From positions 9,424,001 to 9,488,000 of the forward strand of contig NC_047080.1 in assembly GCF_902459465.1 (NCBI RefSeq): DNA of 64,000 bases, given 5' to 3'. This DNA is from Asterias rubens (taxonomy: Eukaryota). Below the pieces are notes generated by a model that saw only the letters and a program-made list of their open reading frames with translations, was not told the origin of the DNA and ran no database searches. Each line of letters opens with the position of its first letter. Positions within the stretch are counted from its first letter, which is position 1. Shown piece by piece: positions 2,429 to 58,218 of this stretch. The translations under genes and the position numbers were made by a program.

Positions 2429-5400
2429 CTACAGAGCCGGTTTGCTGAGCATCCGTCTTTTCTTGTAGATTCCAAAGAACCACATCAGACCAGTTAGGAA
2501 GGAGAGACTGTACCTGGTATTTATAATGCAAGAAGATAATGAAAGTAACCTTTAAATAAAACTGATATGATAGTTTGAGCAGCCATCTAAGTGAAGGCCA
2601 AGAGTCGGCTAAGAGGTGGCTAGTAGTTGGCTTTCTAAACTGCTAGGGCTAGCTACAATCCCGGCCATATCTCGTTGGGCCCCCCTGCCCCCTTTCAATG
2701 TTGGTTCCATTTGCCGACTGTGTTCCAAATTACAGTCAACATTGAGCGGGGGGCAGGGGGGCAAATGTTTTGAATGTGAATGTGAATGGGAAGTGCACAG
2801 GGAACTGTTGTATCAGGAAAGGGTGGCCCAAGCATTTTGGCCGGGATTGTAGGATCTAAGAGCAAGCTTGAGCCAGCTTGAGCCCGAAAGAAGCCAGCTA
2901 GGGCCAGCTCGGCCCAGCTAGGGTCAGCCAAGAGCCAGCTAGGGCCAGCTAAGAGCCAGCTGGGGCCAGCGACAACCCAACTATGGCCAGCTACGAACCA
3001 GCTAGGGCCAGCTAAGAGCCAGCTAAGGCCAGATAAGAGCCAGCTAGGGCCAGCTAATTAGAGCCAGCTAGGGCCAGCTATAAGAAAGCTAATTAGAGCC
3101 AGCTAAGAGTCCGTGAAGAGCCAGCAAAGAGACAGATAGGGCCAGCTAGGCTAGGGGCTAGCTAAGAGCCAGCTAGGGGCCACCTGAGAGCCAGGTTAGA
3201 GTCAGCTAAGAGCCTTTTAAGAGCCTGCTAAGAGCCAGCTAAGAGCCAACAAGCAGCTAACAGCCAACTATGAGCCATCTAAAGGTAAGCTAGAGCCATT
3301 TAAGAACCTGCTAAGAGCCAGCTAGAGGCCACCTGAGAGCCAGGTTAGAGTCAGCTAAGAGCCTTTTAAGAGCCTGCTAAGAGCCAGCTAAGAGCCAACA
3401 AGCAGCTAACAGCCAACTATGAGCCATCTAAAGGTAAGCTAGAGCCATTTAAGAACCTGCTAAGAGCCACCTAGGGGCCACCTGAGAGCCAGGTTAGAGT
3501 CAGCTAAGAGCCTTTTAAGAGCCTGCTAAGAGCCAACAAGCAGCTAACAGCCAACTATGAGCCATCTAAAGGTAAGCTAGAGCCATTTAAGAACCTGCTA
3601 AGAGCCAGCTAGAGGATACCTGAGAGCCAGCTTAGAGTCAGCTAAGAGCCTTTTAAGAGCCTGCTAAGAGCCAGCTGAGAGCCAACAAGCAGCTAACAGC
3701 CAACTATGAGCCATCTAAAGGTAAGCTAGAGCCATTTAAGAACCTGCTAAGAGCCAGCTAGGGGCCACCTGAGAGCCAGGTTAGAGTCAGCTAAGAGCCT
3801 TTTAAGAGCCTGCTAAGAGCCAGCTAAGAGCCAACAAGCAGCTAACAGCCAACTATGAGCCATCTAAAGGTAAGCTAGAGCCATTTAAGAACCTGCTAAG
3901 AGCCAGCTAGAGGATACCTTAGAGCCAGCTAGAAGCCAACTAAACGCCAGCTAGCGCCAGTTAGGTTCTAAGAGCCAGTTTGAGCATGCTTAAAGAAAGC
4001 TTGGAGCTAAGAGCCAGCTTAGAGCTGAGAGCAAATCACAGCTGGAGCCAGCGATGATTTTTGAGTTGGCTTTGTGCCAGCTGAATGCCAGCCATGAGCC
4101 AGCAAATAGTCAGCAAGGAGCCAACTAAAAGCCAGTTAAGAGCAAGCTAGAGCTAATCGCGGAATATGTACTATCTAAGAGCCAGCAAAGACAGGGCCAA
4201 TGGTGTTACTTTTAAGCCAGGGTAGAAGGAATTACTTAAATGTACTGACCATGTTATCATGTACTGAAGATGCTCATTCCGTAGTGTGACCCTTGACTGA
4301 CCTCCAATAGGACCACCTGGGATATCACACGCTGAAATAAACAACAAAACATCAAATGTATCAGATGACAAATAGAATTATAATCTCAGTAGTTGTGAAT
4401 AAGATAAACTTCTAGAGAGAGCGAAAACACCCAAGAGTGAAAACACCCAATGTTAATTGTGAGAAAAACCACAGGACTTAATCACAGACAGACAAAATGA
4501 AACATGTTATTTTATTGAAGTCTGAGCAGACTCAGCTGGGAAGTACATAGTATAGAGAGAGAATTACACAGTAAGAACTGTACTAAAACAAAATAACCTT
4601 AGACCTAAATTATCCAGATAATAAATATTGACGACATTGAGACAAAAATAAACAAGAAAAGAACTATCAGGGAAAACTAAATGCATCTTTTTCTTTTGAT
4701 AACTTAGGACTGAACAAAGACACAATTGCTAGAGGGGAATGTGAACCAACAACCAACAACATCTGGTTAACCTGCTGGCACTCCACTATCTCGCCCTATG
4801 TTGGCAGTTTCCTTATTGTATCAACATGTTTTGTCTGGGTGACAGTCAAAACTGTTAGCTGTCGTGTAGCAAGAGATCACACTTCAAGGCAGTGGACACT
4901 GCAGTGGTTCCTGTCACTGCAGGTAAAAACCTGAGGCAAAGTTTAACTTACAGCTGTCTGCATCAATCATAACAGGTTCAGCTCCGGTGACCTTTGACAT
5001 CTCTTCAAGGTCAAGGTAATGCCAACGACCTCGCTGTGTATCATTCTTGGGCATAAATGCTGCCCTCTGTCAAAAATAACAAGTAAACATGTAGGTTAGT
5101 TATAGTCGCCTAGTTTTCCCTACAACTTTGAGATTATTGTAGTCGAAATAGTGAATAAATTAAAGGAAATTAAAATCATACCTTTTCTGTTTTGCGCACA
5201 AGACCAACTAGCTCGATCTCCCCTGAAATCTGCAAGAAAAAAATTAAATCAACCTATTAACTAAACTATAATGGGACAAAATCTTGACTGCTTGAGTTTT
5301 ACCCTGGAATAACTCTCTTGTATTGAGCTCCCACATCTAAAACTGAAATGTCCCTCTTTATCTTCTCTCCACTGGGCTCTTAGCTAGTAGGAGAGATTAA

Positions 5401-10037: not shown

Positions 10038-10252
10038 ATGGCTAGTCCCAGTTACCATCTCAAGTTTGGCAAAGGTGCTGCGGAGTCAGTAGATCAATAT
10101 TTGGAATATAGACGGTAAGGATGGAGTTGTTTACATTTGTAGGATTTGAAACTTTGCATGGTGGAAATACGATATAGAAAGGTTTGTGGTAACACCATGT
10201 AATGACTATCTCTAATGGGAAAAATTTTACGTCGTCGCCACCAACTTCCGGC

Positions 10253-10283
<31 letters not shown>

Positions 10284-10346
10284 GTGCACCTGAGGAGGTT
10301 TTCAATCGATTGGGCTAGGATGAAAAAGTGGTTTTTATAGGGGATC

Positions 10347-10392
<46 letters not shown>

Positions 10393-13300
10393 CTATAAAA
10401 TTTATGTAAAAAAACACCCCGTGAATTGTCTACAGGTCCCGTTTCTCCCTTCTCTCCTCGATCCTGCCTTCTCTCTCATCCAGTCTCCATGTATCTCTAT
10501 CTGGTGTCTATGCTGGAAGAAATGGATAGTTAGTAATCATTGAAATAATGTAATGCAGTACCGGGAGTCGAACCTGTAAAGCAGAGTTAACAAGTTACTA
10601 TACATTCAATAGTCCATAGCCTAACCCACCGGGCTACGAGGCGTTGATACCAAATTTAGTTGTCTGTCCTAGATGTGTTTGCCATTACCTGGGTCAATAA
10701 AGGTCATAATGAATATGTAATTTAAATGAATATTAAAATAAGCTGTGATTGTCCAGTGCTTTGCATAAGTTGAATATTCATACCGTCCTGAATGACGAAC
10801 TCCTTCACGCATCAGTCACGTGAAAGGTTATTTGGATTGTTCCACTAGTATGAGTCCCGAGGGGAGTTCCACCGAGGACGCACGTAATCACCAAGAGTAA
10901 TTATTTAGAAAGTCTCCCAATTGTTCTGTTGGGCTATATAAGGAAGCTCTTGAAGTCTTGAAGTCATGTTGTCATGCTTTCTAAGTTGAAACATGAATAC
11001 CTTTTGGAATGCTGAGAGATTGTTTGAGACTGTTGCCACGCCGGATGCTGCAATTGCGTTCTGCAAAGAACGTGGACTAATTGCCGACGCCCCCGATTGC
11101 CGGTACTGCCGCCACCCGTTGACATGGTCCGTGAAGACGGACCATGCCGACGGGTTCTCGTGGCGGTGCACACATCGGGGGTGCCGGAAGCGGTCTCGCA
11201 ATTGCAGCATCCGTCATGGCAGCTGGTTTAGCGACAGCAAGATGTCACTGAAAAAAATCCTCAAGCTCACCTACTACTGGGCGGCACGAGCGACAACCTC
11301 TGCGGCAATTAGAGAAACATCAGTCCACGAAGGTGAACAAACCAGTAGTAAAACTGTCGTGGACTGGTTCACTTTTTGCCGCGAGGTTTGTCTTCGTGCC
11401 GTCGAGGAACGGTGCAGCAAGGGGATTGGTGGGCCGGGCATGACGGTCGAAATCGACGAGTCAAAATTCGGTCGCCGGAAATACAACCGAGGTCGTTTGG
11501 TTGAGGGTAAGTGGGTGTTAGGCGGCATTTGCCGTGAGACAAAGGAAATTTTCCTGATTGAGGTGCCAAAGCGGGATTCAGCGACCCTTATTCCTTTAAT
11601 TAAGGAATATGTGGCCGCTGGATCCACAATCATATCGGACTGTTGGAAAGCATATGATTGCCTCAGTCAGGAAAATTTTACTCATCTCACGGTAAATCAC
11701 TCCTTAAATTTCGTTGATCCTACCACTGGCGCTCATACTCAAAATATTGAGTGCCAGTGGTGGCAGATCAAGAGGAGTCTGCCGAGCACCCACGCTACCA
11801 GCTCTACCGACGGCTTCGGTTTCCGGTTGGCCGAATACATGTGGCGCCGTCAGAATGCCCTGGTCGACCACTTCGACCAAATCCTCAGTGACATCTTGCT
11901 GTTGTATAAACCACCGAAACGTTTTTGAATTGGCCCGTCCCCGACAACTCTCACGACTACCCTACTTTAAGGCACTGCTCCGCAGAAACGCCAGACAAAT
12001 AAATCCAAAGATAGAATCATAGTTAACCAACCAACACATTACCGTTTATTAATTTAAATAACTTCCAAGAAAATTGTCCCTTACAAATATTCGATTAATA
12101 ATGCAACATGATCCCTTACCTAAAACATACTCAAAAGCAACTGGTGACCCCAAGTTCAAATAAGGCAAAATGTCCATATCATCCAACTGCAATTTAAAGG
12201 GATTATTATACATTACATGGATGTTGGACTTCATTTCCCCTTATTTTTGCTGGGTGGCTAAAATAAGATATACCCCCGCCGTACAGGCCCGTAGACTAGG
12301 TCAACCTGCTTATTATGCAATGACGGTCATTGTATTGAAACCATAACAGCCTATTCTTATAACATAACATTACCTTCATAAACGCACGTGGTTATTTTGT
12401 GGTTTGTTCGAATTTCCCTCCGTCCTCCCTCCCTCCCCTCCTCCCTTCCCAAAATAATTTCAGTGTACCCATTTCGGAAATGAATCAGTCCTAGCGATTT
12501 TTTCCATTGCGCATGGACGCTGACCGACTGATTGGAGTGTTGAACAACAACACTCACACACACAAACAACATAAACATGGCGGAGTTCGATGTCACTGGG
12601 AGTCGAAAACGGCCCAATTTTGACCTTTGTTTACAAACTGTTACGTTTTTTTTCTCTCTTTTTTTTCTGGATGTATATATGCGTTAACCCTTCTTCTCAG
12701 GTAAGAAAAAAATTCAGTGGTTTTGGAGTTAATTAACGGCGGATAAATTGGTGGCGACGACCGGAAGATTACCCCTCTAATGAGTTGGGGTGGTACTTAA
12801 GCAGCCTGCAGAGTCCAGCTTTCTCCAGAAGCGATCAGAGCGTACTGATCAAAACGTCGAGTTGAAACCAACGGTTCTTTTCAGAACCACCCCAACTCAT
12901 TAGAGATAGTCATTACAATTAGTTACTACTTACATGGTGTTTTACCGCAAACCTTTCTATTTATTATGTTATGGTTTACATTTCTCAAGTATTTTTTTTT
13001 TTTAATAATTAAAGATATCATACTATCACTATCAATATCAGAATCTTGATTTGCAACCACAAGGTTGTGTGTAACAACCCCACCTGTGACCTAACCGCTT
13101 ATTTCACAATGACTAGAGTCCGGTCCTACTACTTGCCGTCAACTCACCGACTTGCCGTCAACTCGCCGTCAACTCATTTTCGTGCCGTCAACTCATTAAA
13201 TTTACATGAAAAATTTATAAATGGGACACGGAAGTGTTAAGTCTGGGCTAAACTACATATTTCTCATGGTTTTCGGTAAAAATTCATTCACAAAATCGAC

Positions 13301-17346: not shown

Positions 17347-19848
17347 GCTGAGATGTCGGTTGGAAAAACCATGTTGAATAGGCTTGACTGTTTTTTTTTC
17401 TGATAAAATATAACAAGCTTTTGCAAACTGCTTAGTGCTTACCAACCAAAATGACCTTTGGTATTGCAAAAAAAAATAGTTAATGGCCTGACGTTTCAAC
17501 CATAGCAGGGTCTTTCTCGATGGCTAAAGAAAGGTGTGTTTTTTTCTTCTCTGTGTTGTATTTCAAATACTTTCACTTTTGCAAAGTGTCATCCCTGCAC
17601 CAATTTCTTTCACAGAGGTCCAAAAAAGAAAAAACTGTGTAAAGGATGGGAAATTATTTTGTGTGTAATTAATAATGAAAAAAATAAAACACCCGAAAAT
17701 GGCTGACGGGAATTTTTCATTTAAGAAAAGGGCCATTAAAATTTTACTTGAAGAAACATTATTGTTTATCAAGGAAAGGCTGTGTCCTAATTTGTGGCTA
17801 AGGCAATTTCTGCAGCTGTGTCTAAGTGTGTTGCCAAGGGCCGCCTATACATCAAGACCTAATGATGTGGTCACCAAGCAAGCCTCTTGTTTCGGAACAG
17901 CCAAATATTTAAGTGTTGATGGGGTGGGTTTTGACGTCAACTCACTGAAACCAAATACTTTACATGTTGGTGTGACAGAGTGAAGATGTCCTCTTGGAAC
18001 ATTTTAATTTAGCCAGAGCAATTAGATAACTAAGAAAATGTATTGTTTTTACTTGATAAACAAACGTGTGACAGTGAGTTTGTATATAAGGAACAGTGTG
18101 TATATTTTATGCCGAAAGATGTAGTGTTTTAAACTAAATAAAAAATAAGATTATTTTGTACAACCAATAAATGCATATATTGTGCGATGTTAAAATGAAG
18201 ACAATTTGTTTTGTATCCATTGCTTGTGTTTTTAAAGTAACTGTTTTAAAGCTGTATTTTAATTAATTTAGCTAGGGAGTAGGGAATACCACCGAAATGT
18301 TATTCTGTCACGATTTTTTATTTAACCCAAACCATTTTAAATTTCCATCTCGACTCAAGGTTGCTTTAAAAAAAATTGGTGGGAAATACGTAAATGTTCA
18401 AAATGTACTAACAACCAATGAAACTTTCATTATAAGCCTGTGTACTGGCTTATGGGGGGCAAGTTAGTATCAAGCGCATTCCTTTAAAAGAAATTGAGGC
18501 AGGTCTATTATAAAGAATTTTCAATAAACAAAATCAATGAAATTCTCATAACAAGCCCTTGACCATTGGACCATCTAGGTCAGAAGTTGGTTTTTCGCAT
18601 CAACTTGAGAGATGTACCATTTCCTTCTCAGGAAAAACTGTTCACCGTTTACTCGGAGTTGTTTTGTTCGATACATTTGTTTTGAAACCCGAGAATTGTT
18701 TGAGCTGTGTGGTCATGTTGTTTACTTGTACCACGTGGACAAGAACAAAAGATCAAGTCGTGACAGATTTGTAAACTTGCCCGGGTGGGAAAATTCTGAG
18801 GTCAAGTTGCGGTGAAACTTAAACCTAGTGTGAAAGTTAATCTTGTCACTGGACAACTCTGGCGTGGAATTGGTCATTTTCCAGTCAATCGTCCGGCCTA
18901 TGAAGGACGTGTTTACTGAAGTTACACTAACCATGGAGGTAGACTCATTGTGTGTGCCTTCATGTATATTGGGGCAATTCATTTGTAAATTTCGACATTG
19001 TGAGCAAGTCAAAAGAAATAACTGAAAATCCAAATTCAGTTAGGGGATGTGGGAGGAAAAATACTCAAACGAGGGAAAACCAGCTCCAATGGGCAATTAA
19101 CAACATTTAAAAAAGAAGACAAAATACCCAGCTGGCCAAGATCGTAAATTTCATACATGATTCTACGACAAAGTAAAAGTTATTAATTGTTTAAGCCAGG
19201 AAGCTGTTGAAAACTACTCATGTTGGAGACCTTTCATCTAAAATATCTGGCCGTTTACTTTGTTCATCAGTGTTTAGATTAGTATTATTTATAGAGCCAA
19301 CTTTTCTGAGTGGCACACATTACTTTCCCAGCATTTTCCCTTTTGCTTCAAATCGTCTAACCATGGATTGGAGGTAGGACGAAAGATAAAATTGATTTGT
19401 GGTGAACGATCATTCAGTATGTGACGAATAATAAATCAACGATCAGGGACTGGTTTGAATGAAACTGATCTTCACAACAATACACGTCTTGCAATTCTGT
19501 CTATATAAACGAAGAGGTCACGAACAAACTTTTAAACAATCGGACACAAGTAGTTACAAGGTGGGTGTTATGAGAACTCCGAAGATCAAATTTCGTGTGC
19601 GCCTTTTGTTTAGGCTAAAACAACACGTCACCCAATCGACCTTACAACAAGATATTCTATTTCACGACATACGAAATAAAACCTTTATTTGTTTATGTTA
19701 ATGAGAAGTTGTGTCTTTAGCGGAGCTTAAAGCACCTGCTAGCGTTTCCGCTTAGGGAATCGAAGGCTGCTTTGCGCGGACAGATGACAAGAATCCTTCC
19801 GCTGTTTAATTCCTTATTTTTGTAACAGCTCCCGTCCTGATAGTTTAA

Positions 19849-20209
19849 AGGCACTGGCCAAGTTTGGTAATTGTCAAAGACAAGTAGACCTATTCTCATT
19901 TGGTATATCCCAACATAGGCATATGCATAAAATAACAAACCTGTGAAAAATTGAGCTCAATTGCTTGTCGAAGTTGCAAGAGAAAGTGAAAGAAAAACCA
20001 CCCTTGTGTGTCTTTAGATGATGCATACAGCTGAAGTCTTTTATTATTTGAGTGAGAAATAACCTCTTTCTCAAAAACTACACGTCTTCAGAGCAGAGGG
20101 AGCCGTGGCTCACAATTTCGTTATATTCAACAGTTCCATTGCTCATTTCCGAGTAGGTTTTTATGCTAACAATTGTTTTGAGTAATTACCAATAGTGTCC
20201 ATAGTGCCT
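19849..20209. mobile_element. Kolobok-type TTAA MITE (further copies 26762-27144, 32434-32822, 39134-39484, 51840-52211, ~52905-53286, ~60070-60710, 61343-61719)
   Basis: TTAA|AGGCACTGG ... GTGCCT|TTAA ends and a shared internal sequence (CATAAAATAACAAACCTGTGAAAATTTGAGCTCAAT, GAGGGAGCCGTTTCTCACAATG). Confidence 0.85.
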
Positions 20210-21511: not shown

Positions 21512-22654
21512 ATGTCTGCCGTGGCCAAATCAGAAGCTCTTATTTACAAGGACGCCAGGCAGTACTGCCAGCGTAGACACCAGAAAACAATGGGGAAATG
21601 CGCTCGGGAAGAACGGCAGAACGACGCCCTGTTAAGCCGCCAACTTCGGCATATCCATAAATCCAAATCTTACCGAGAAAGAGAGCTCGACCGTGAGCAG
21701 GAGAAGTGCTTGACGGACCTAGTGACGATATTTGACCGCCAGTGTCAGATTGCGACTACGCGACTTGCCCGGAGATTGAAAGACGCACTCGGTGACGCGG
21801 ATGGGTTGTGGGGCGGCGAAAAGACCGAGAGTGGTGAAAGCTCCCGGACAAGCAGGAAGCTCTTCAAAAAAGGTAACAACAAACAGCTTGCTAAACCCTC
21901 CAATGGGTTCATCTTGAATTCGTGGGACAAGCATCGAAGTTTTCCTGCATCACGCGGAGGAAAAGGATCTCCCTCTCAGAAAAACAACCGTCATTTACCG
22001 TCGACATCGTTGAATGACTTAATAACCAGCCGATCAAACTTCCTAAGACGTGATAACTTTTCAAGTTCGGACTCGTCACCAAGAATGTGGCAGCGGATCC
22101 CGCCATCCGTACAGCCCACAACCCCCACGCCAAGTCTCAACCAACAACATGTATTCCAGAACCAAATCGGACTTCGGGAGTCAGCAGGGCTAAATAACTC
22201 CAGCCGGGGGGTCAGCAAAAGGAGGAGACCGACTCGACCCAAAACGGCTCCACCTACAGCAGGTTTAAGCCACGAGGCGACTAGGCGATGGAACGAGCTT
22301 GCCTCTCCGATAAGATGCCCACAGCATTCTAAAGATACCTCATCTCAAGCATTGCCAAAAGCTAGAAGCCTACGATGTCTACGTGAGGAATGCACCAAGA
22401 CCGAGAAACACATCCTAGACGCGCCGGAGGATGTGTGTTTCCGACGGCAGTACTTAGCCTGCGCCATGTCCCGTAAGCTACCGGTGAGCGGCTTGAAGAG
22501 TGGCAGTTTCGCCCAACAAGATGAGGTCAGAAAGAAGATGGACGGAAGAAGGAGATGTATGGAAGAACTCAGAATGAACAATAGACAGCGATCTAAGTCT
22601 GCCCCTGCTGGTGTTGTGCGCATGCCTGGCAAAGAATTGCAAGCCAAATGTTGA
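21512..22654 (+). CDS. Uncharacterised 380-aa basic protein, single coding exon; N-terminal coiled coil possibly CCDC190-like
   Basis: Long stop-free ORF in GC-richer DNA; acceptor TTTGAAG at 21482 just upstream and a candidate non-coding exon donor (CATTAG|GTACGG, ~20566). EERQNDALLSRQLRHI...YRERELDREQ loosely recalls the CC190 pattern; remainder is Ser/Pro/Arg-rich. Confidence 0.75.
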   Translation: MSAVAKSEALIYKDARQYCQRRHQKTMGKCAREERQNDALLSRQLRHIHKSKSYRERELDREQEKCLTDLVTIFDRQCQIATTRLARRLKDALGDADGLWGGEKTESGESSRTSRKLFKKGNNKQLAKPSNGFILNSWDKHRSFPASRGGKGSPSQKNNRHLPSTSLNDLITSRSNFLRRDNFSSSDSSPRMWQRIPPSVQPTTPTPSLNQQHVFQNQIGLRESAGLNNSSRGVSKRRRPTRPKTAPPTAGLSHEATRRWNELASPIRCPQHSKDTSSQALPKARSLRCLREECTKTEKHILDAPEDVCFRRQYLACAMSRKLPVSGLKSGSFAQQDEVRKKMDGRRRCMEELRMNNRQRSKSAPAGVVRMPGKELQAKC

Positions 22655-28179: not shown

Positions 28180-31100
28180 TCACTTCTCAATCCATGATGA
28201 CAAGAGGTCGATAGGCAGAGGGAAGATGATGGTGGAGTTCTTCTCAGCAGAGATGGTCTGTAAAGTCTGAAGGTATCTGAGTTGGAGGGCATTAGGTGCC
28301 TCGGCGATGATGTCGGCAGCCTCCTTGAGAGCTCGAGATGCATTCTGCTCACCCTGTGCGGCTATCACCTACATAGAAACACAAAACCATCAATACATTA
28401 ATATTATGACCTGAGACAACTTTTGTTTTTGTTCTATTATTTGTTTTAATGAGTCAACACCCAACTCGGAATCGGCTCGCTTAACTCGTCTGTGCTGTCG
28501 ACCAAATCAACTGACACCAGGGGCCCGAGATTATCCAAGAACAAATTGTTGTTGTTGAGTGATTTTGTTTGGTTCCAATATAAACTGCCTTGGGTTGGCG
28601 TATTTGGCATCTTTCCTCGCCCTCCACCCCTGGAACCACGCTTTGGATCCCATCAGGGGGGGGGGGATGTGGATTAGGTTTTTCAGTCCCCACCTGATTG
28701 CGTGGGTTTTCCCAGCATTGAATATTTCTCTAGGAATATCCTCACATCTAAAATGTCCTCCTCGTTTGCTTTTCTAAAAGTTCTATAGCTTCTTTCTTAA
28801 ACAGATAAAAATAAATGAGAAAGAGAAGACTGACCTTAGCACGTGCTTCTCTTGATGCTTCAGCTTCTGCTGCCATGGCTCTCTGCAGTTGAAGGGGCAA
28901 CCTTACATCCTTACTGAATTATAAAAATCATTATAATGTATCATTAACAATAAGGTAGAATGTGACTTTGGTACACGCAGTGTTTGAACTGATACATTTG
29001 TACTGAAAATGTTTCCATCTCTGAAAAAAAAGCTAGTGGGTTCCATAGAGATCCATTAGGCTCCGCCCTCAGCGCACGTGTGGGCAAGAACATGTGAGCC
29101 TCTCAGCGCACGTGTGGGCAAGAACATGTGAGCCTCTCCAATGCCATTCTGCACAACACTTCCATGTGCGCCCTGCATATGGGCACGCATGTCAGACTAG
29201 TCTTGGTTCAAGACTCTCCTGGATTTGTCACAAGAGGGCGCGCTATCACCCCAACGCGCTATCAACCACGAACCGCTATCACCCGAGAACCGCTATCACA
29301 GGAGAGTCTTGGTACATTCGTTCAATCTAATTTGCATAATTTATGTACACGTCACAGCTTTGTTGCTAGCGCGTGTGCGCAGGTTTTATAAAGGGGTGGG
29401 CTCTGCGGGAAACCGACGCATGCGCATTATGTTTCCCCCCGATTTTGGGGGGAGATTGAACGAATGTACCAAAACTCTCCTGTGATAGCGGTTCTCGGGT
29501 GATAGCGGTTCGTGGTTGATAGCGCGTTGGGGTGATAGCGCGCCCTCTTTTGACAAATCCAGGAGTGTCTTGAACCAAGACTAATGTCAGACTTGTGTTG
29601 GACTTTTGGTTTCGCAATGGGTTGTGATGGGTCAATACGCAATGGGGCGGAGCTTAATGGATCGGTCTATTACCAAAGGTATACAAATCCCAAAGGTCTA
29701 AAAAGATCAGGCCTGAAAAAGATGTCACACTTACATTTCAACTCTCTCCACTTTTACACCCCATGGATCCGTAGCTTCATCTAACACCGATTGCATATGA
29801 CTACTGATGGACTCACGAGAGCTCAGTACCTCCGCTAAGGTCTTCGTACCCAAGACATTCCGCAGAGTTGTTGCTGCCAAGAGCTCTGTCGAGCGCTTAA
29901 AGTTCTCCACGTTAACGACGGACATAGTGGGGTTCTGAACGCGGAAGTACACCACAGCGTCTACAGTGACTGTCACACTGTCCTTGGATAGGATCTATGA
30001 ACAAGAAAGGAACAGTTATTTTAGAGTTTTATAGACTTTGGCAACAAATCTGCCAAATAAGAGGCTACTATAAATGTTGCAACACTTTAAAACAACATAC
30101 CAAGAAACTCTGAGGCAGACCTGGAGAAGAGAGTGGCTGCTGGATATGATTTCACCATGAATACCCTTGAACTTAAATGTTAATAATTAGGGGAGATGAA
30201 GGTTAAATAAGAATAACATTTGTTTTTACCCTTACAACGATGTGTACTTTCCCAAGTTCTGTGACAAAAATTCACAGGCAAGTCACTCATGTTGAATTTG
30301 AGTACCCGATGCAAAATTAAAACCTAATAAATCATTGTTGTACCCGCTGCTAACACATAGGATTTAAACTGCCTCTAGCCAATCAGGCTAGCTCGGAGTT
30401 CCAGTGTACTAGTAAATACACCTGCTCCAGCAACGTAAAGGTCGTGGGTTCAAATCCCACCCTAGTGATTTGAATGTGGATTTTTTTCACAGGACTCAGG
30501 AAAGAATAAAGTATACAGTCTATTAAAATATACATCGATGTAAGGGTAAAGTAAGTATTATTATTCTTTTTCTCCAACGCAAAATTATCATCCATTAAAT
30601 TAGAAGCAAGAACATTACCTCCTGTGGTGGAACATCAAAGGACAGTGTCCTCAAATCAATCACTCTGAATTCATCAATACATGGCAGGATAAAGAACAAC
30701 CCTGGTCCTTTGGCACCACCAGGGAGAAGACGTCCTGCTCGGAAGATCACCGCTCTCTCGTATTCTTGTACTGTCTGAGATGGTGAGGAAAAAAAAAAAA
30801 TTAGTAGAGAAAAATAAACCCAAAATTAATGACCAACATTCAGTAAAAATCTTCTTATACAACGCTGTATGTTGTAGTAGCACTTAGAGACTAACTTATT
30901 ACATAACAACTGTGTAATAAGCTTTCGCAGCTACAACTACTTCATCAGACGCATCAGAAGTAGTTGTTGCTACACGAAAACTTAGGCCTACGCAGTTTTT
31001 ATGTAGTTAGTTAGTCTGTAAGTGCTAATACAACATTCCGTGGTTTATCTCTATCAAACCAACAAGGCTATCTTTTATTATTAATTTATAAAAAGATAGC

Positions 31101-32259
31101 TAGAATGACGAGGCTCAAATTTGGAGTAAAGACCAGAATCTTTATGATAATTTATTTTGTTAACAACAAGCACTAAGAGGATTTATCTAATTAATATGCC
31201 TTGGTAAGTACCAAAAGAATTAAACGTTGTTTATTAGACTCAAAGTCAACATTTGAAGATAATTTTAAATAGTGAGGTAATAATACTCAATCGAAAAAAT
31301 CAAGACCCCCAGGCCTTGTCTGGACCCAATTTCATAGAGCTGCTCTAAAGGCATAAAAAGTAACCAAACTAAAAAAAAAAATTAGTTCTCCGAGAGTGGG
31401 TAACAACTTACCCTAAAGACAAAGCAGAGTGATATTGGGAAAGTAATACAACACACGAAGAAGGAAAAACCAAATAGGATGTAGTAACATACACCCATAT
31501 TCGGGTCATCACCTAAGAGAAAGAAGAGGGAAAAAATGTTATAAAAATATTACAGATTGTAAAGTAGAAAAAAATCCACACAGTTGATTTGAAAATGGAT
31601 TTAACAGGACAAAGAGTTGTGGGGACACCTGACTAATTGTTGATAAATATTTACTTTCCACTACAACAAGCCACGATTGAGGCAATTGGTCACTGGTCTT
31701 GGCTTTGGTGCCCCTTTCAAAAGTTTGGAAGTGCCCTTTAGAAAACGAAAAATTACCTTGCCCTTTCAATGTTGACATTCCAGGGAAAGAAAACAATATT
31801 CAAGCTCTTTTACACTGAATTGAAAACAACTTTAATTAATTTGTTTTTCTATGTACTCATTCATTGTGATAATGTTACTTCAACAAAACTCACCTCAAAC
31901 AATAAAACTAATCAATCTAACTCTTTTTTTTTTTGCCTATCATGATGTTTATATACTGTCTTAAAAAAAAAAATTATATCTTAAAAAATTATATTGTTTG
32001 TTTCAGTGTTTATTTTAAGTTAAAGGCCTTCGGGCCTCAGTTATTAGATAATTTTTCTTGTCCTTGTATCTTCTGTTCCTTTGTCATTTTAACCAGTTGC
32101 CTTGCACTGTTTTGTAATATTGTCATGTGAAGTATGCAAAATAAATATTAATAATAACAAAAATATTTAGACAAAGAATTTAAACACAATTAACTGCTGC
32201 TCACCCTTTTGTTCGGTTGGCTCCCCAGACAGACGGAGAGGTCGCTCACGCTCATTCAT
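28180..32259 (-). CDS. Stomatin / band-7 (SPFH) family protein, 6 exons, 279 aa
   Basis: Exons 32259-32205, 31512-31412, 30774-30619, 29994-29735, 28913-28835, 28368-28180 (840 nt). Hydrophobic hairpin CITFPISLC; [11 protein letters not shown]; [18 protein letters not shown]; ATTLRNVLG; [16 protein letters not shown]; [10 protein letters not shown]. The first coding exon is least certain and the paralogue (STOM/STOML3/NPHS2/mec-2) is not assignable by eye. Confidence 0.93.
29198..29583. mobile_element. 386-bp MITE with ~130-bp inverted arms in a stomatin intron
   Basis: TAGTCTTGGTTCAAGAC...GGTACATTCGTTCAATCT (to ~29329) is mirrored at ~29455-29583. Confidence 0.85.
30225..30595 (+). mobile_element. 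Family B copy with 5' tail duplicate and an upstream inverted fragment
   Basis: CCCGATGCAAAATT at ~30306, tRNA-like core with GGTTCAAATCCC, degenerate tail at ~30565-30595; 30225-30295 is reverse-complement body sequence. Confidence 0.65.

Positions 32260-49556: not shown

Positions 49557-58218
<8,662 letters not shown>

What the first reader, a model, noticed from the sequence alone, without database searches (positions are those of the whole stretch)
10218..12774. Apparently intact, young Merlin transposon with a provable empty site
Seen: uninterrupted 311-aa ORF with Cys motif and D-D-E residues, both TIRs and a perfect 8-bp TSD. Removing the element plus one TSD restores the left arm of a host MITE so that it mirrors the right arm, which carries CATTAGAG only once. 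Knowledge: Merlin is the eukaryotic branch of the IS1595/IS1016 group with 8-9-bp TSDs and is far less studied than Tc1 or hAT. Inference: a candidate active element.
Basis: partly seen in the sequence, partly recalled or inferred. Interest (0 to 1): 0.7.

Follow-up and report, generated by a model that had tools for sequence, protein, structure and literature searches.

The report
Intact young Merlin transposon, sea star
This is a complete, very young copy of a Merlin-type cut-and-paste jumping gene in the common starfish Asterias rubens, one of a few dozen near-identical copies, so the family probably moved recently, but it is an ordinary new member of a known transposon superfamily.

Summary
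Window 10218-12774 is a 2,557-bp element with an 8-bp target-site duplication (CTCTAATG), 27-nt imperfect GG...CC terminal inverted repeats, and an uninterrupted 311-aa ORF. The ORF matches DDE_Tnp_IS1595 and NCBIfam IS1595 and keeps the conserved D155/D216/E253 and a CxxC...CxxxxC zinc-ribbon motif.

The window is Asterias rubens (GCA_902459465.3, LR699110.1). Two A. amurensis copies align exactly to 10218-12774 and have their own 8-bp duplications, which fixes the element boundaries. The empty site is shown twice: by the mirror arm of the host repeat, and by an uninterrupted copy of that repeat in A. amurensis.

Evidence for recent activity:
- The copy differs from the consensus of 13 near-identical copies at 5 of 2,557 bases.
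- It encodes the consensus protein.
- At least five other right flanks exist.
- Contig depth suggests roughly 15-40 copies.

Between species, non-coding divergence (4.5-5.4%) equals the host baseline (5.15%), while the ORF is constrained (dN/dS 0.18-0.27). That fits vertical descent of a continuously active lineage, not horizontal transfer or domestication.

Mobility today, transcription and polymorphism of this insertion are not shown.

In passing: a sister copy at an orthologous locus has E253A yet is conserved, so it is a domestication candidate.

The scan had earlier noted only a "Merlin-like MITE" elsewhere in this genome.

The parts
10210..10217 (.). left copy of the 8-bp target-site duplication, CTCTAATG
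10218..10244 (+). left terminal inverted repeat (27 nt, starts GG; inner 14 nt perfect)
   Evidence: identical outer 13 nt in A. amurensis copies L010 and L011
10255..10386 (.). subterminal T29 ... 67 nt ... A36 inverted runs (hairpin-capable); length varies between copies
   Evidence: The homologous but much shorter runs in subfamily 2 show it is ancestral to the element, not a nested insert.
10934..10943 (+). TATA-like box CTATATAAGG, about 50 nt upstream of the ATG (putative promoter; inferred only)
   Evidence: conserved in the A. amurensis subfamily-1 copies, deleted in subfamily 2
10993..11928 (+). 311-aa transposase ORF: N-terminal helices, CxxC...CxxxxC zinc ribbon (C36, C39, C59, C64), helix-turn-helix region, RNase-H-like DDE core (D155, D216, N235, E253, K260)
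11998..12003 (+). AATAAA, 70 nt after the stop codon (putative polyadenylation signal; inferred only)
   Evidence: conserved in A. amurensis subfamily-1 copies
12748..12774 (-). right terminal inverted repeat (27 nt, ends CC)
12775..12782 (.). right copy of the target-site duplication, CTCTAATG
10139..10217 (.). host high-copy repeat, left arm, part before the insertion
12783..12967 (.). host repeat: rest of the left arm (12783-12800), centre, and right arm (12880-12967) carrying CATTAGAG once. Includes a histone-3'-stem-loop-like motif at 12868-12913.

Best explanation
Window 10218-12774 is an autonomous copy of a Merlin-superfamily (IS1595-like) DNA transposon of Asterias rubens, at LR699110.1 about 9,434,218-9,436,774.

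Proposed mechanism (inferred from family knowledge):
- The intronless 311-aa transposase is made from its own TATA and AATAAA unit.
- It binds the 27-nt GG...CC ends through its N-terminal zinc ribbon and helix-turn-helix.
- It cuts the element out with its RNase-H-fold DDE centre (D155, D216, E253).
- It reinserts at staggered cuts 8 bp apart, which produces the 8-bp duplication.

This copy landed recently in one arm of a very abundant short host repeat. The family has been transmitted vertically in Asterias. It stayed active after the A. rubens / A. amurensis split and amplified separately in both species. This copy encodes the family's consensus protein and is probably transposition-competent.

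Shown: anatomy, family membership, empty site, multiple near-identical copies at other sites, and selection on the ORF. Inferred: the promoter, DNA binding by the N-terminus, present-day mobility, and competence of this particular copy.
For: Family and fold:
- PF12762, E 1.2e-16.
- NF033547, 85.9 bits, above its cut-off of 75.
- AlphaFold model pLDDT 90.1, pTM 0.87. D155 lies on the first core strand, D216 at the end of strand 212-216, and E253 on helix 250-262.
- Best structural matches are DDE integrases and transposases: PFV integrase, ISCth4, IstA, TnsB.

Boundaries:
- A. amurensis copies L010 and L011 align to exactly 10218-12774.
- They carry their own 8-bp duplications, TTAATTGT and TAAATTGT.

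Empty site.

Species: 3143/3143 identity to the A. rubens record.

Youth and copy number:
- 13 other contigs are 0.17-1.36% different from this copy, and this copy is 5/2557 from their consensus.
- Eight other 311-aa variants each differ by 1-3 private residues from the window protein.
- Five different right flanks were found, one of them inside another Merlin copy.
- Single perfect-match contigs have depth 2418-2595 against 148.6 for the unique flank in run X1, and 337-1026 against 25.5 in X2.

Activity after speciation: L010 and L011 differ by 0.59% from each other but 3.9-4.0% from the window copy.

Selection:
- ORF 2.1-2.35% diverged with no indels, against 4.5-5.4% with indels in the non-coding parts.
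- dN/dS 0.27 and 0.18.

Vertical descent: orthologous A. rubens / A. amurensis flank DNA is 5.15% diverged, the same as the element's non-coding parts.
Against: - No direct evidence of movement. No Logan contig bridges the unique flank and the element, because the flanks are a high-copy repeat, so presence/absence of this insertion in other individuals could not be read.
- Contigs from RNA-labelled runs cover coding and non-coding parts alike, and one runs into a foreign flank. This could be DNA carry-over or read-through, so transcription is not shown.
- The outer 13 nt of the inverted repeats match at only 6 positions.
- The comparison copies were found through near-identical proteins, and some are metagenome contigs that may be collapsed or chimeric. 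L002 has unequal flanking octamers. Copy divergence is therefore biased low.
- Contig depth is only a rough proxy for copy number.
- Some young copies are already dead: variants P0137 and P0138 lack E253-C254, and there is a 5-base deletion in an X15 contig.
Confidence: 0.82

Rival explanations
1. This is a recently dead family. The copy is structurally intact, but the family no longer moves (silenced, or the transposase is subtly defective), and this insertion is fixed in A. rubens.
For: No polymorphism, excision footprint or clean transcript was seen. Inactivated young copies exist. The inverted repeats are imperfect.
Against: The copy is 0.2% from the consensus and has a perfect duplication. 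It encodes the consensus protein with all conserved residues. A nested Merlin-in-Merlin insertion exists among 99.8%-identical copies.
Confidence: 0.15
2. This is a domesticated Merlin-derived host gene rather than a transposon.
For: The ORF is under purifying selection between species (dN/dS 0.18-0.27). A sister copy does behave this way.
Against: The window copy has both ends and a perfect duplication and sits inside a repeat. It belongs to a multi-copy set with different flanks. The A. amurensis relatives lie at other loci with other duplications. The catalytic residues are intact.
Confidence: 0.02
3. The element arrived in Asterias rubens by recent horizontal transfer.
For: Merlin has a patchy distribution, and horizontal transfer has been proposed for it (PMC8101967). 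Identical ORFs turn up in several marine and macroalgal metagenomes.
Against: Non-coding divergence between the A. rubens and A. amurensis copies (4.5-5.4%) equals the host's orthologous non-coding divergence (5.15%). The element's dS (0.056-0.061) is close to the dS of 0.049 at an orthologous locus. The next relatives are also sea-star sequences: subfamily 2 at 84% and Patiria at 56%. The metagenome hits are most simply starfish DNA: runs X1 and X2 also hold the unique flank at over 99%.
Confidence: 0.04

Closest known systems
Merlin superfamily of eukaryotic DNA transposons (Feschotte 2004, as summarised in PMC8101967)
   Same: DDE_Tnp_IS1595 catalytic domain with the conserved D-D-E. Inverted repeats within the described 24-462 nt range and starting with GG. 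8-bp target-site duplication. Single intronless transposase of about 300 aa.
   Different: This clade keeps an N-terminal CxxC...CxxxxC zinc ribbon, and Pfam Zn_ribbon_IS1595 hits 10 of 71 homologs. Merlin is usually described as lacking that domain (PMC8101967). The outer half of the inverted repeats is asymmetric. The 2021 survey listed 8 echinoderm sequences in 2 species, and its supplement holds no Asterias, Patiria or Acanthaster.
Bacterial IS1595 family insertion sequences
   Same: The protein passes the NCBIfam IS1595 equivalog-domain cut-off. Shared features are the 8-bp duplication, one transposase gene, and a zinc ribbon plus DDE architecture.
   Different: The host is a eukaryote. 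The element is 2.6 kb with long non-coding subterminal regions and eukaryote-type TATA and AATAAA signals. Its relatives are animal sequences.
Symbiodinium kawagutii Merlin family Sy.k_F1 (PMC8101967)
   Same: A Merlin family judged active from conserved duplications despite very divergent 5' and 3' inverted repeats (12 mismatches in 26).
   Different: Unrelated host and sequence. In the present element the inner 14 nt of the repeats are perfect.

Membership tests
Merlin superfamily | Transposase with a DDE_Tnp_IS1595 domain | tested here: met
   PF12762 E 1.2e-16, 61.6 bits against cut-off 27. NF033547 85.9 bits against 75.
Merlin superfamily | Conserved catalytic D-D-E | tested here: met
   D155, D216 and E253 are at least 90% conserved in 71 homologs. 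In the model they lie on the expected strand, strand end and helix. The fold matches DDE integrases and transposases.
Merlin superfamily | Terminal inverted repeats (24-462 nt) beginning 5'-GG | tested here: met
   27 nt, 20/27 matching, GG...CC termini. The ends are conserved in A. amurensis copies.
Merlin superfamily | 8- or 9-bp target-site duplication | tested here: met
   8 bp in the window copy and in two independent A. amurensis copies.
Merlin superfamily | Absence of the Zn_Tnp_IS1595 zinc finger (a usual trait, not strictly defining) | tested here: inconclusive
   No PF12760 hit for this protein at E up to 0.1. However, the Cys motif is invariant in the family, and 10 of 71 aligned homologs hit PF12760. 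The model shows three short strands at that position.
Active (mobile) transposon | Observed excision, new insertion or insertion polymorphism | not testable with these tools
   Only Logan contigs were available, and the high-copy flanks break them at the junctions.
Active (mobile) transposon | Several near-identical copies at different sites with intact ORFs | tested here: met
   Depth ratio about 15-40.
Domesticated transposase gene | Single copy at an orthologous locus in related species, with the transposon ends lost | tested here: not met
   The window copy has both ends and a duplication. The relatives in A. amurensis lie at other loci.
MITE (the host repeat) | Short, non-coding, high-copy element with terminal inverted repeats and its own duplication | tested here: inconclusive
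   High copy number and local inverted arms are confirmed. However, a solo arm exists in A. amurensis, and no duplication of the host repeat itself was identified.

The most novel reading that the evidence does not exclude
The family is mobile in living Asterias rubens, and this insertion is polymorphic. That would give the first Merlin element in which transposition can be shown experimentally with a natural, unrepaired copy.

In addition, its catalytically dead sister ORF (E253A) is conserved at an orthologous locus in A. rubens and A. amurensis. That sister ORF may be an exapted Merlin-derived gene, for example a DNA-binding regulator or repressor of the active family.
Probability: 0.35. 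Interest if true: 0.55.

Novelty: new member of a known kind. Interest (0 to 1): 0.35.

Why it matters
Merlin is one of the least studied DNA-transposon superfamilies. My searches found no paper reporting a transposition assay for any Merlin, and no solved structure is detectable by sequence.

A natural copy that encodes its family's consensus protein, has defined ends, and has a documented empty site is a ready substrate for a first biochemical and genetic test. It is also a possible marker of recent genome dynamics in a widely used echinoderm model.

Otherwise it is a routine transposon annotation: it changes nothing about how such elements are thought to work.

Tried and rejected
- tRNA-like segment at about 10550-10645 (a T-arm-like 13-mer): ARAGORN finds nothing, and Rfam finds no tRNA at E up to 1. 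Dropped.
- Rfam Phe_leader and MIR4239 hits at 10215-10407 are below threshold and are caused by the T and A runs. Rejected.
- Presence/absence and excision from public runs: all runs were Logan contigs. The joints listed come from other copies of the host repeat, and none is specific to this locus. Uninformative.
- Transcription: RNA-labelled runs hold pieces of coding and non-coding parts and a foreign flank. Not interpretable.
- L002 as a further duplication example: its flanking octamers differ, so it is probably a chimeric metagenome contig. Not used.
- Other copies or fragments in the window: none.
- Synteny of the FMN_dh neighbour between Asterias subfamily 2 and the Patiria cluster: tblastx of the partial genes gave no hit, and the orientation differs. 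Inconclusive.
- P0005 look-up: not on record.
- Horizontal transfer and domestication of the window copy: considered and rejected on the divergence and locus data.
- I did not run the second large protein search or the representative search, because family assignment was already unambiguous.

Full report
**What is there**

The stretch 10218-12774 (2,557 bp) has these parts:
- An uninterrupted 311-aa ORF at 10993-11928 on the + strand.
- The octamer CTCTAATG directly outside both ends, at 10210-10217 and 12775-12782. The repeat cannot be extended on either side.
- Ends that form a 27-nt inverted repeat without gaps, with 20 of 27 positions matching. The inner 14 nt are perfect and the termini are 5'-GG and CC-3'.
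- The perfect 14-mer occurs only at these two places in the 64-kb window, where 0.19 hits are expected by chance.

No other copy or fragment of the element lies in the window.

**The protein**

- Pfam gives DDE_Tnp_IS1595 (E 1.2e-16). NCBIfam gives the IS1595-family transposase model above its curated cut-off (85.9 against 75 bits).
- In an alignment of 71 animal homologs, C36 and C39 are invariant. C59, D155, D216, N235, E253 and K260 are at least 90% conserved.
- Ten of the 71 homologs hit Pfam's Zn_ribbon_IS1595 at the aligned N-terminal Cys motif, although the window protein itself does not.
- An AlphaFold model built from that alignment is confident (pLDDT 90.1, pTM 0.87). It shows N-terminal helices, three short strands at the Cys motif, a helical region, and then an alpha/beta core.
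- In the core, D155 lies on the first strand, D216 at the end of strand 212-216, and E253 on helix 250-262.
- Foldseek's best matches are DDE enzymes of the retroviral-integrase fold: PFV integrase, ISCth4, IstA and TnsB.
- No solved structure is related by sequence.

**Whose genome**

A 380-aa ORF elsewhere in the window is an annotated product on Asterias rubens GCA_902459465.3, record LR699110.1. The fetched 3,143 bp are identical to the window. The element therefore lies at about 9,434,218-9,436,774 of that record.

**Boundaries and empty site**

- Two copies in the Asterias amurensis assembly (L010, L011, on different chromosomes) align to exactly 10218-12774 at 93% including gaps.
- Each has its own 8-bp duplication, TTAATTGT and TAAATTGT.
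- They share the same asymmetric outer ends, so the imperfect repeats are a property of the family, not decay.
- Deleting 10218-12782 restores a string that occurs exactly, in reverse complement, in the right arm at 12887-12917.
- A copy of the same host repeat in A. amurensis (L011:592-688) runs through the junction without interruption.

The host sequence is a very abundant unit of about 110 nt, present here as two inverted copies. Its summed contig depth is about 1.2 million against about 149 for the unique flank in run X1.

**Is it young, and is the family multi-copy?**

- The exact window protein is encoded on ten short contigs from marine metagenomes and Logan assemblies.
- Eight other full-length 311-aa variants differ from the window protein by one to three private substitutions each. 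The window copy therefore encodes the consensus protein.
- Thirteen such contigs differ from the window element at 0.17-1.36% of compared bases. The window copy differs from their consensus at 5 of 2,557 positions.
- Five different right-hand flanks were seen. One lies inside another Merlin copy, which indicates a nested insertion.
- In two DNA runs that also hold the unique left flank at over 99% identity, single perfect-match Merlin contigs have 13-40 times the depth of the flank. This is a rough estimate of 15-40 copies.

Caveats: the contigs were found through near-identical proteins, some may be collapsed or chimeric (L002 has unequal flanking octamers), and depth is only a proxy for copy number.

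**History**

| Comparison | Part | Divergence |
|---|---|---|
| Window copy vs A. amurensis copies | ORF | 2.1-2.35%, no indels |
| Window copy vs A. amurensis copies | Non-coding parts | 4.5-5.4%, several indels |
| Window copy vs A. amurensis copies | Synonymous sites (dS) | 0.056-0.061 |
| Orthologous A. rubens / A. amurensis locus | Flank | 5.15% |
| Orthologous A. rubens / A. amurensis locus | Synonymous sites (dS) | 0.049 |
| The two A. amurensis copies vs each other | Whole element | 0.59% |

dN/dS between the window copy and the A. amurensis copies is 0.27 and 0.18. The baseline comes from a sister Merlin copy next to the same GCV_T gene in both species.

The element lineages in the two species are thus about as old as the species split. 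That fits vertical descent and gives no sign of horizontal transfer. Copies within each species are far more alike than copies between species, so the family transposed in both lineages after the split. Purifying selection on the ORF over that time is what a lineage that survives by transposing should show.

**Expression signals (inferred only)**

A TATA-like box at 10934-10943 and an AATAAA at 11998-12003 are conserved in the A. amurensis copies. Contigs from RNA-labelled runs cover coding and non-coding parts, and one runs into a foreign flank. Transcription is therefore not shown.

**What could not be tested**

No contig bridges the unique flank and the element, because the host repeat breaks the assemblies. 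Presence or absence of this insertion in other individuals, and excision, remain open.

**Comparison with the known**

Merlin is defined by an IS1595-type DDE transposase, inverted repeats of 24-462 nt beginning GG, and 8-9-bp duplications (PMC8101967). All of these are met.

The zinc-ribbon motif departs from the usual statement that Merlin lacks that domain, although the same paper notes exceptions. Its survey listed 8 echinoderm sequences in 2 species, and its supplement holds no Asterias, Patiria or Acanthaster. I found no paper on Merlin in sea stars, and no transposition assay for any Merlin.

This is a new member of a known kind.

**Seen on the way**

- The 84%-identical sister copy (A. 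rubens XP_033646441, A. amurensis XP_071784495) sits at an orthologous locus. It has Ala in place of the catalytic E253. It lacks the TATA and AATAAA of the active subfamily.
- Its ORF is nevertheless only 1.6% diverged with no indels, against 5-11% around it. dN/dS is 0.14, with binomial p 0.0011.
- Patiria miniata has three tandem Merlin-derived ORFs, all with Gly in place of D155 and with an upstream spliced coding exon. dN/dS among them is about 0.4.
- Both sets are candidates for domestication. They are not part of the finding itself.

**Verdict**

The element is an intact, very young autonomous Merlin of a family that was active after the Asterias species split. Present-day mobility is likely but unproven. 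Interest is moderate to low (0.35).

Noticed in passing
L001:5001-5936 (A. rubens LR699093.1) and L016:5001-5936 (A. amurensis CP134953.1): A sister Merlin ORF, 84% identical to the window protein, sits at an orthologous locus in both species, with the same GCV_T neighbour. The catalytic E253 is replaced by Ala, and the TATA and AATAAA signals are absent. The ORF is still only 1.6% diverged with no indels, against 5-11% around it (dN/dS 0.14, p 0.0011). It is a candidate domesticated Merlin transposase.
   Followed up: partly
L018:9986-10936, 19126-20076, 30371-31327 (Patiria miniata JADOBP010000028.1): Three tandem Merlin-derived ORFs about 10 kb apart lie beside an FMN_dh gene. All three have Gly in place of catalytic D155 and an upstream spliced coding exon. 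dN/dS among them is 0.37-0.42. An FMN_dh gene also neighbours the Asterias sister copy, but orthology of the two neighbours could not be shown.
   Followed up: partly
window 12868-12913 (+), within the host repeat 10139-10217 / 12783-12967: The very high-copy host repeat carries a histone 3' stem-loop look-alike that passes Rfam's Histone3 gathering score (35.7 against 34 bits). With thousands of copies, it would give many false histone-stem-loop calls in this genome, or it points to a repeat derived from the 3' end of a histone gene.
   Followed up: partly
window 10255-10386: A T29 run and an A36 run flank 67 nt in the element's 5' subterminal part, forming a long potential hairpin. The runs are much shorter in other copies (for example L002) and in subfamily 2, and short-read contigs break there.
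   Followed up: partly
L015:822-1751 (proteins P0137, P0138): Young copies carry an in-frame 6-bp deletion that removes E253-C254, which includes the catalytic glutamate. These are natural inactive variants within the 99%-identical group.
   Followed up: partly
L012:1-803 and 3188-3269; L015:1-213: In two contigs the first 168 nt of the element are replaced by another repeat that has its own inverted repeats (L012 76-103 and 708-735). The L012 copy is inserted inside another Merlin copy (its right flank equals element positions 2018-2099).
   Followed up: partly
window 10396-10723 and 11966-12760 in run X16: A small run of 'organism C' holds contigs for the non-coding parts of the element but none for the ORF (10789-11877). 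This could mean internally deleted, non-autonomous derivatives, or simply low coverage.
   Followed up: no
window 21512-22654 (+) and 49557-50771 (+): A 380-aa ORF with no Pfam match is an annotated A. rubens product. A 405-aa open exon encodes the LisH/CTLH/cross-over region of a WDR47-like protein.
   Followed up: no
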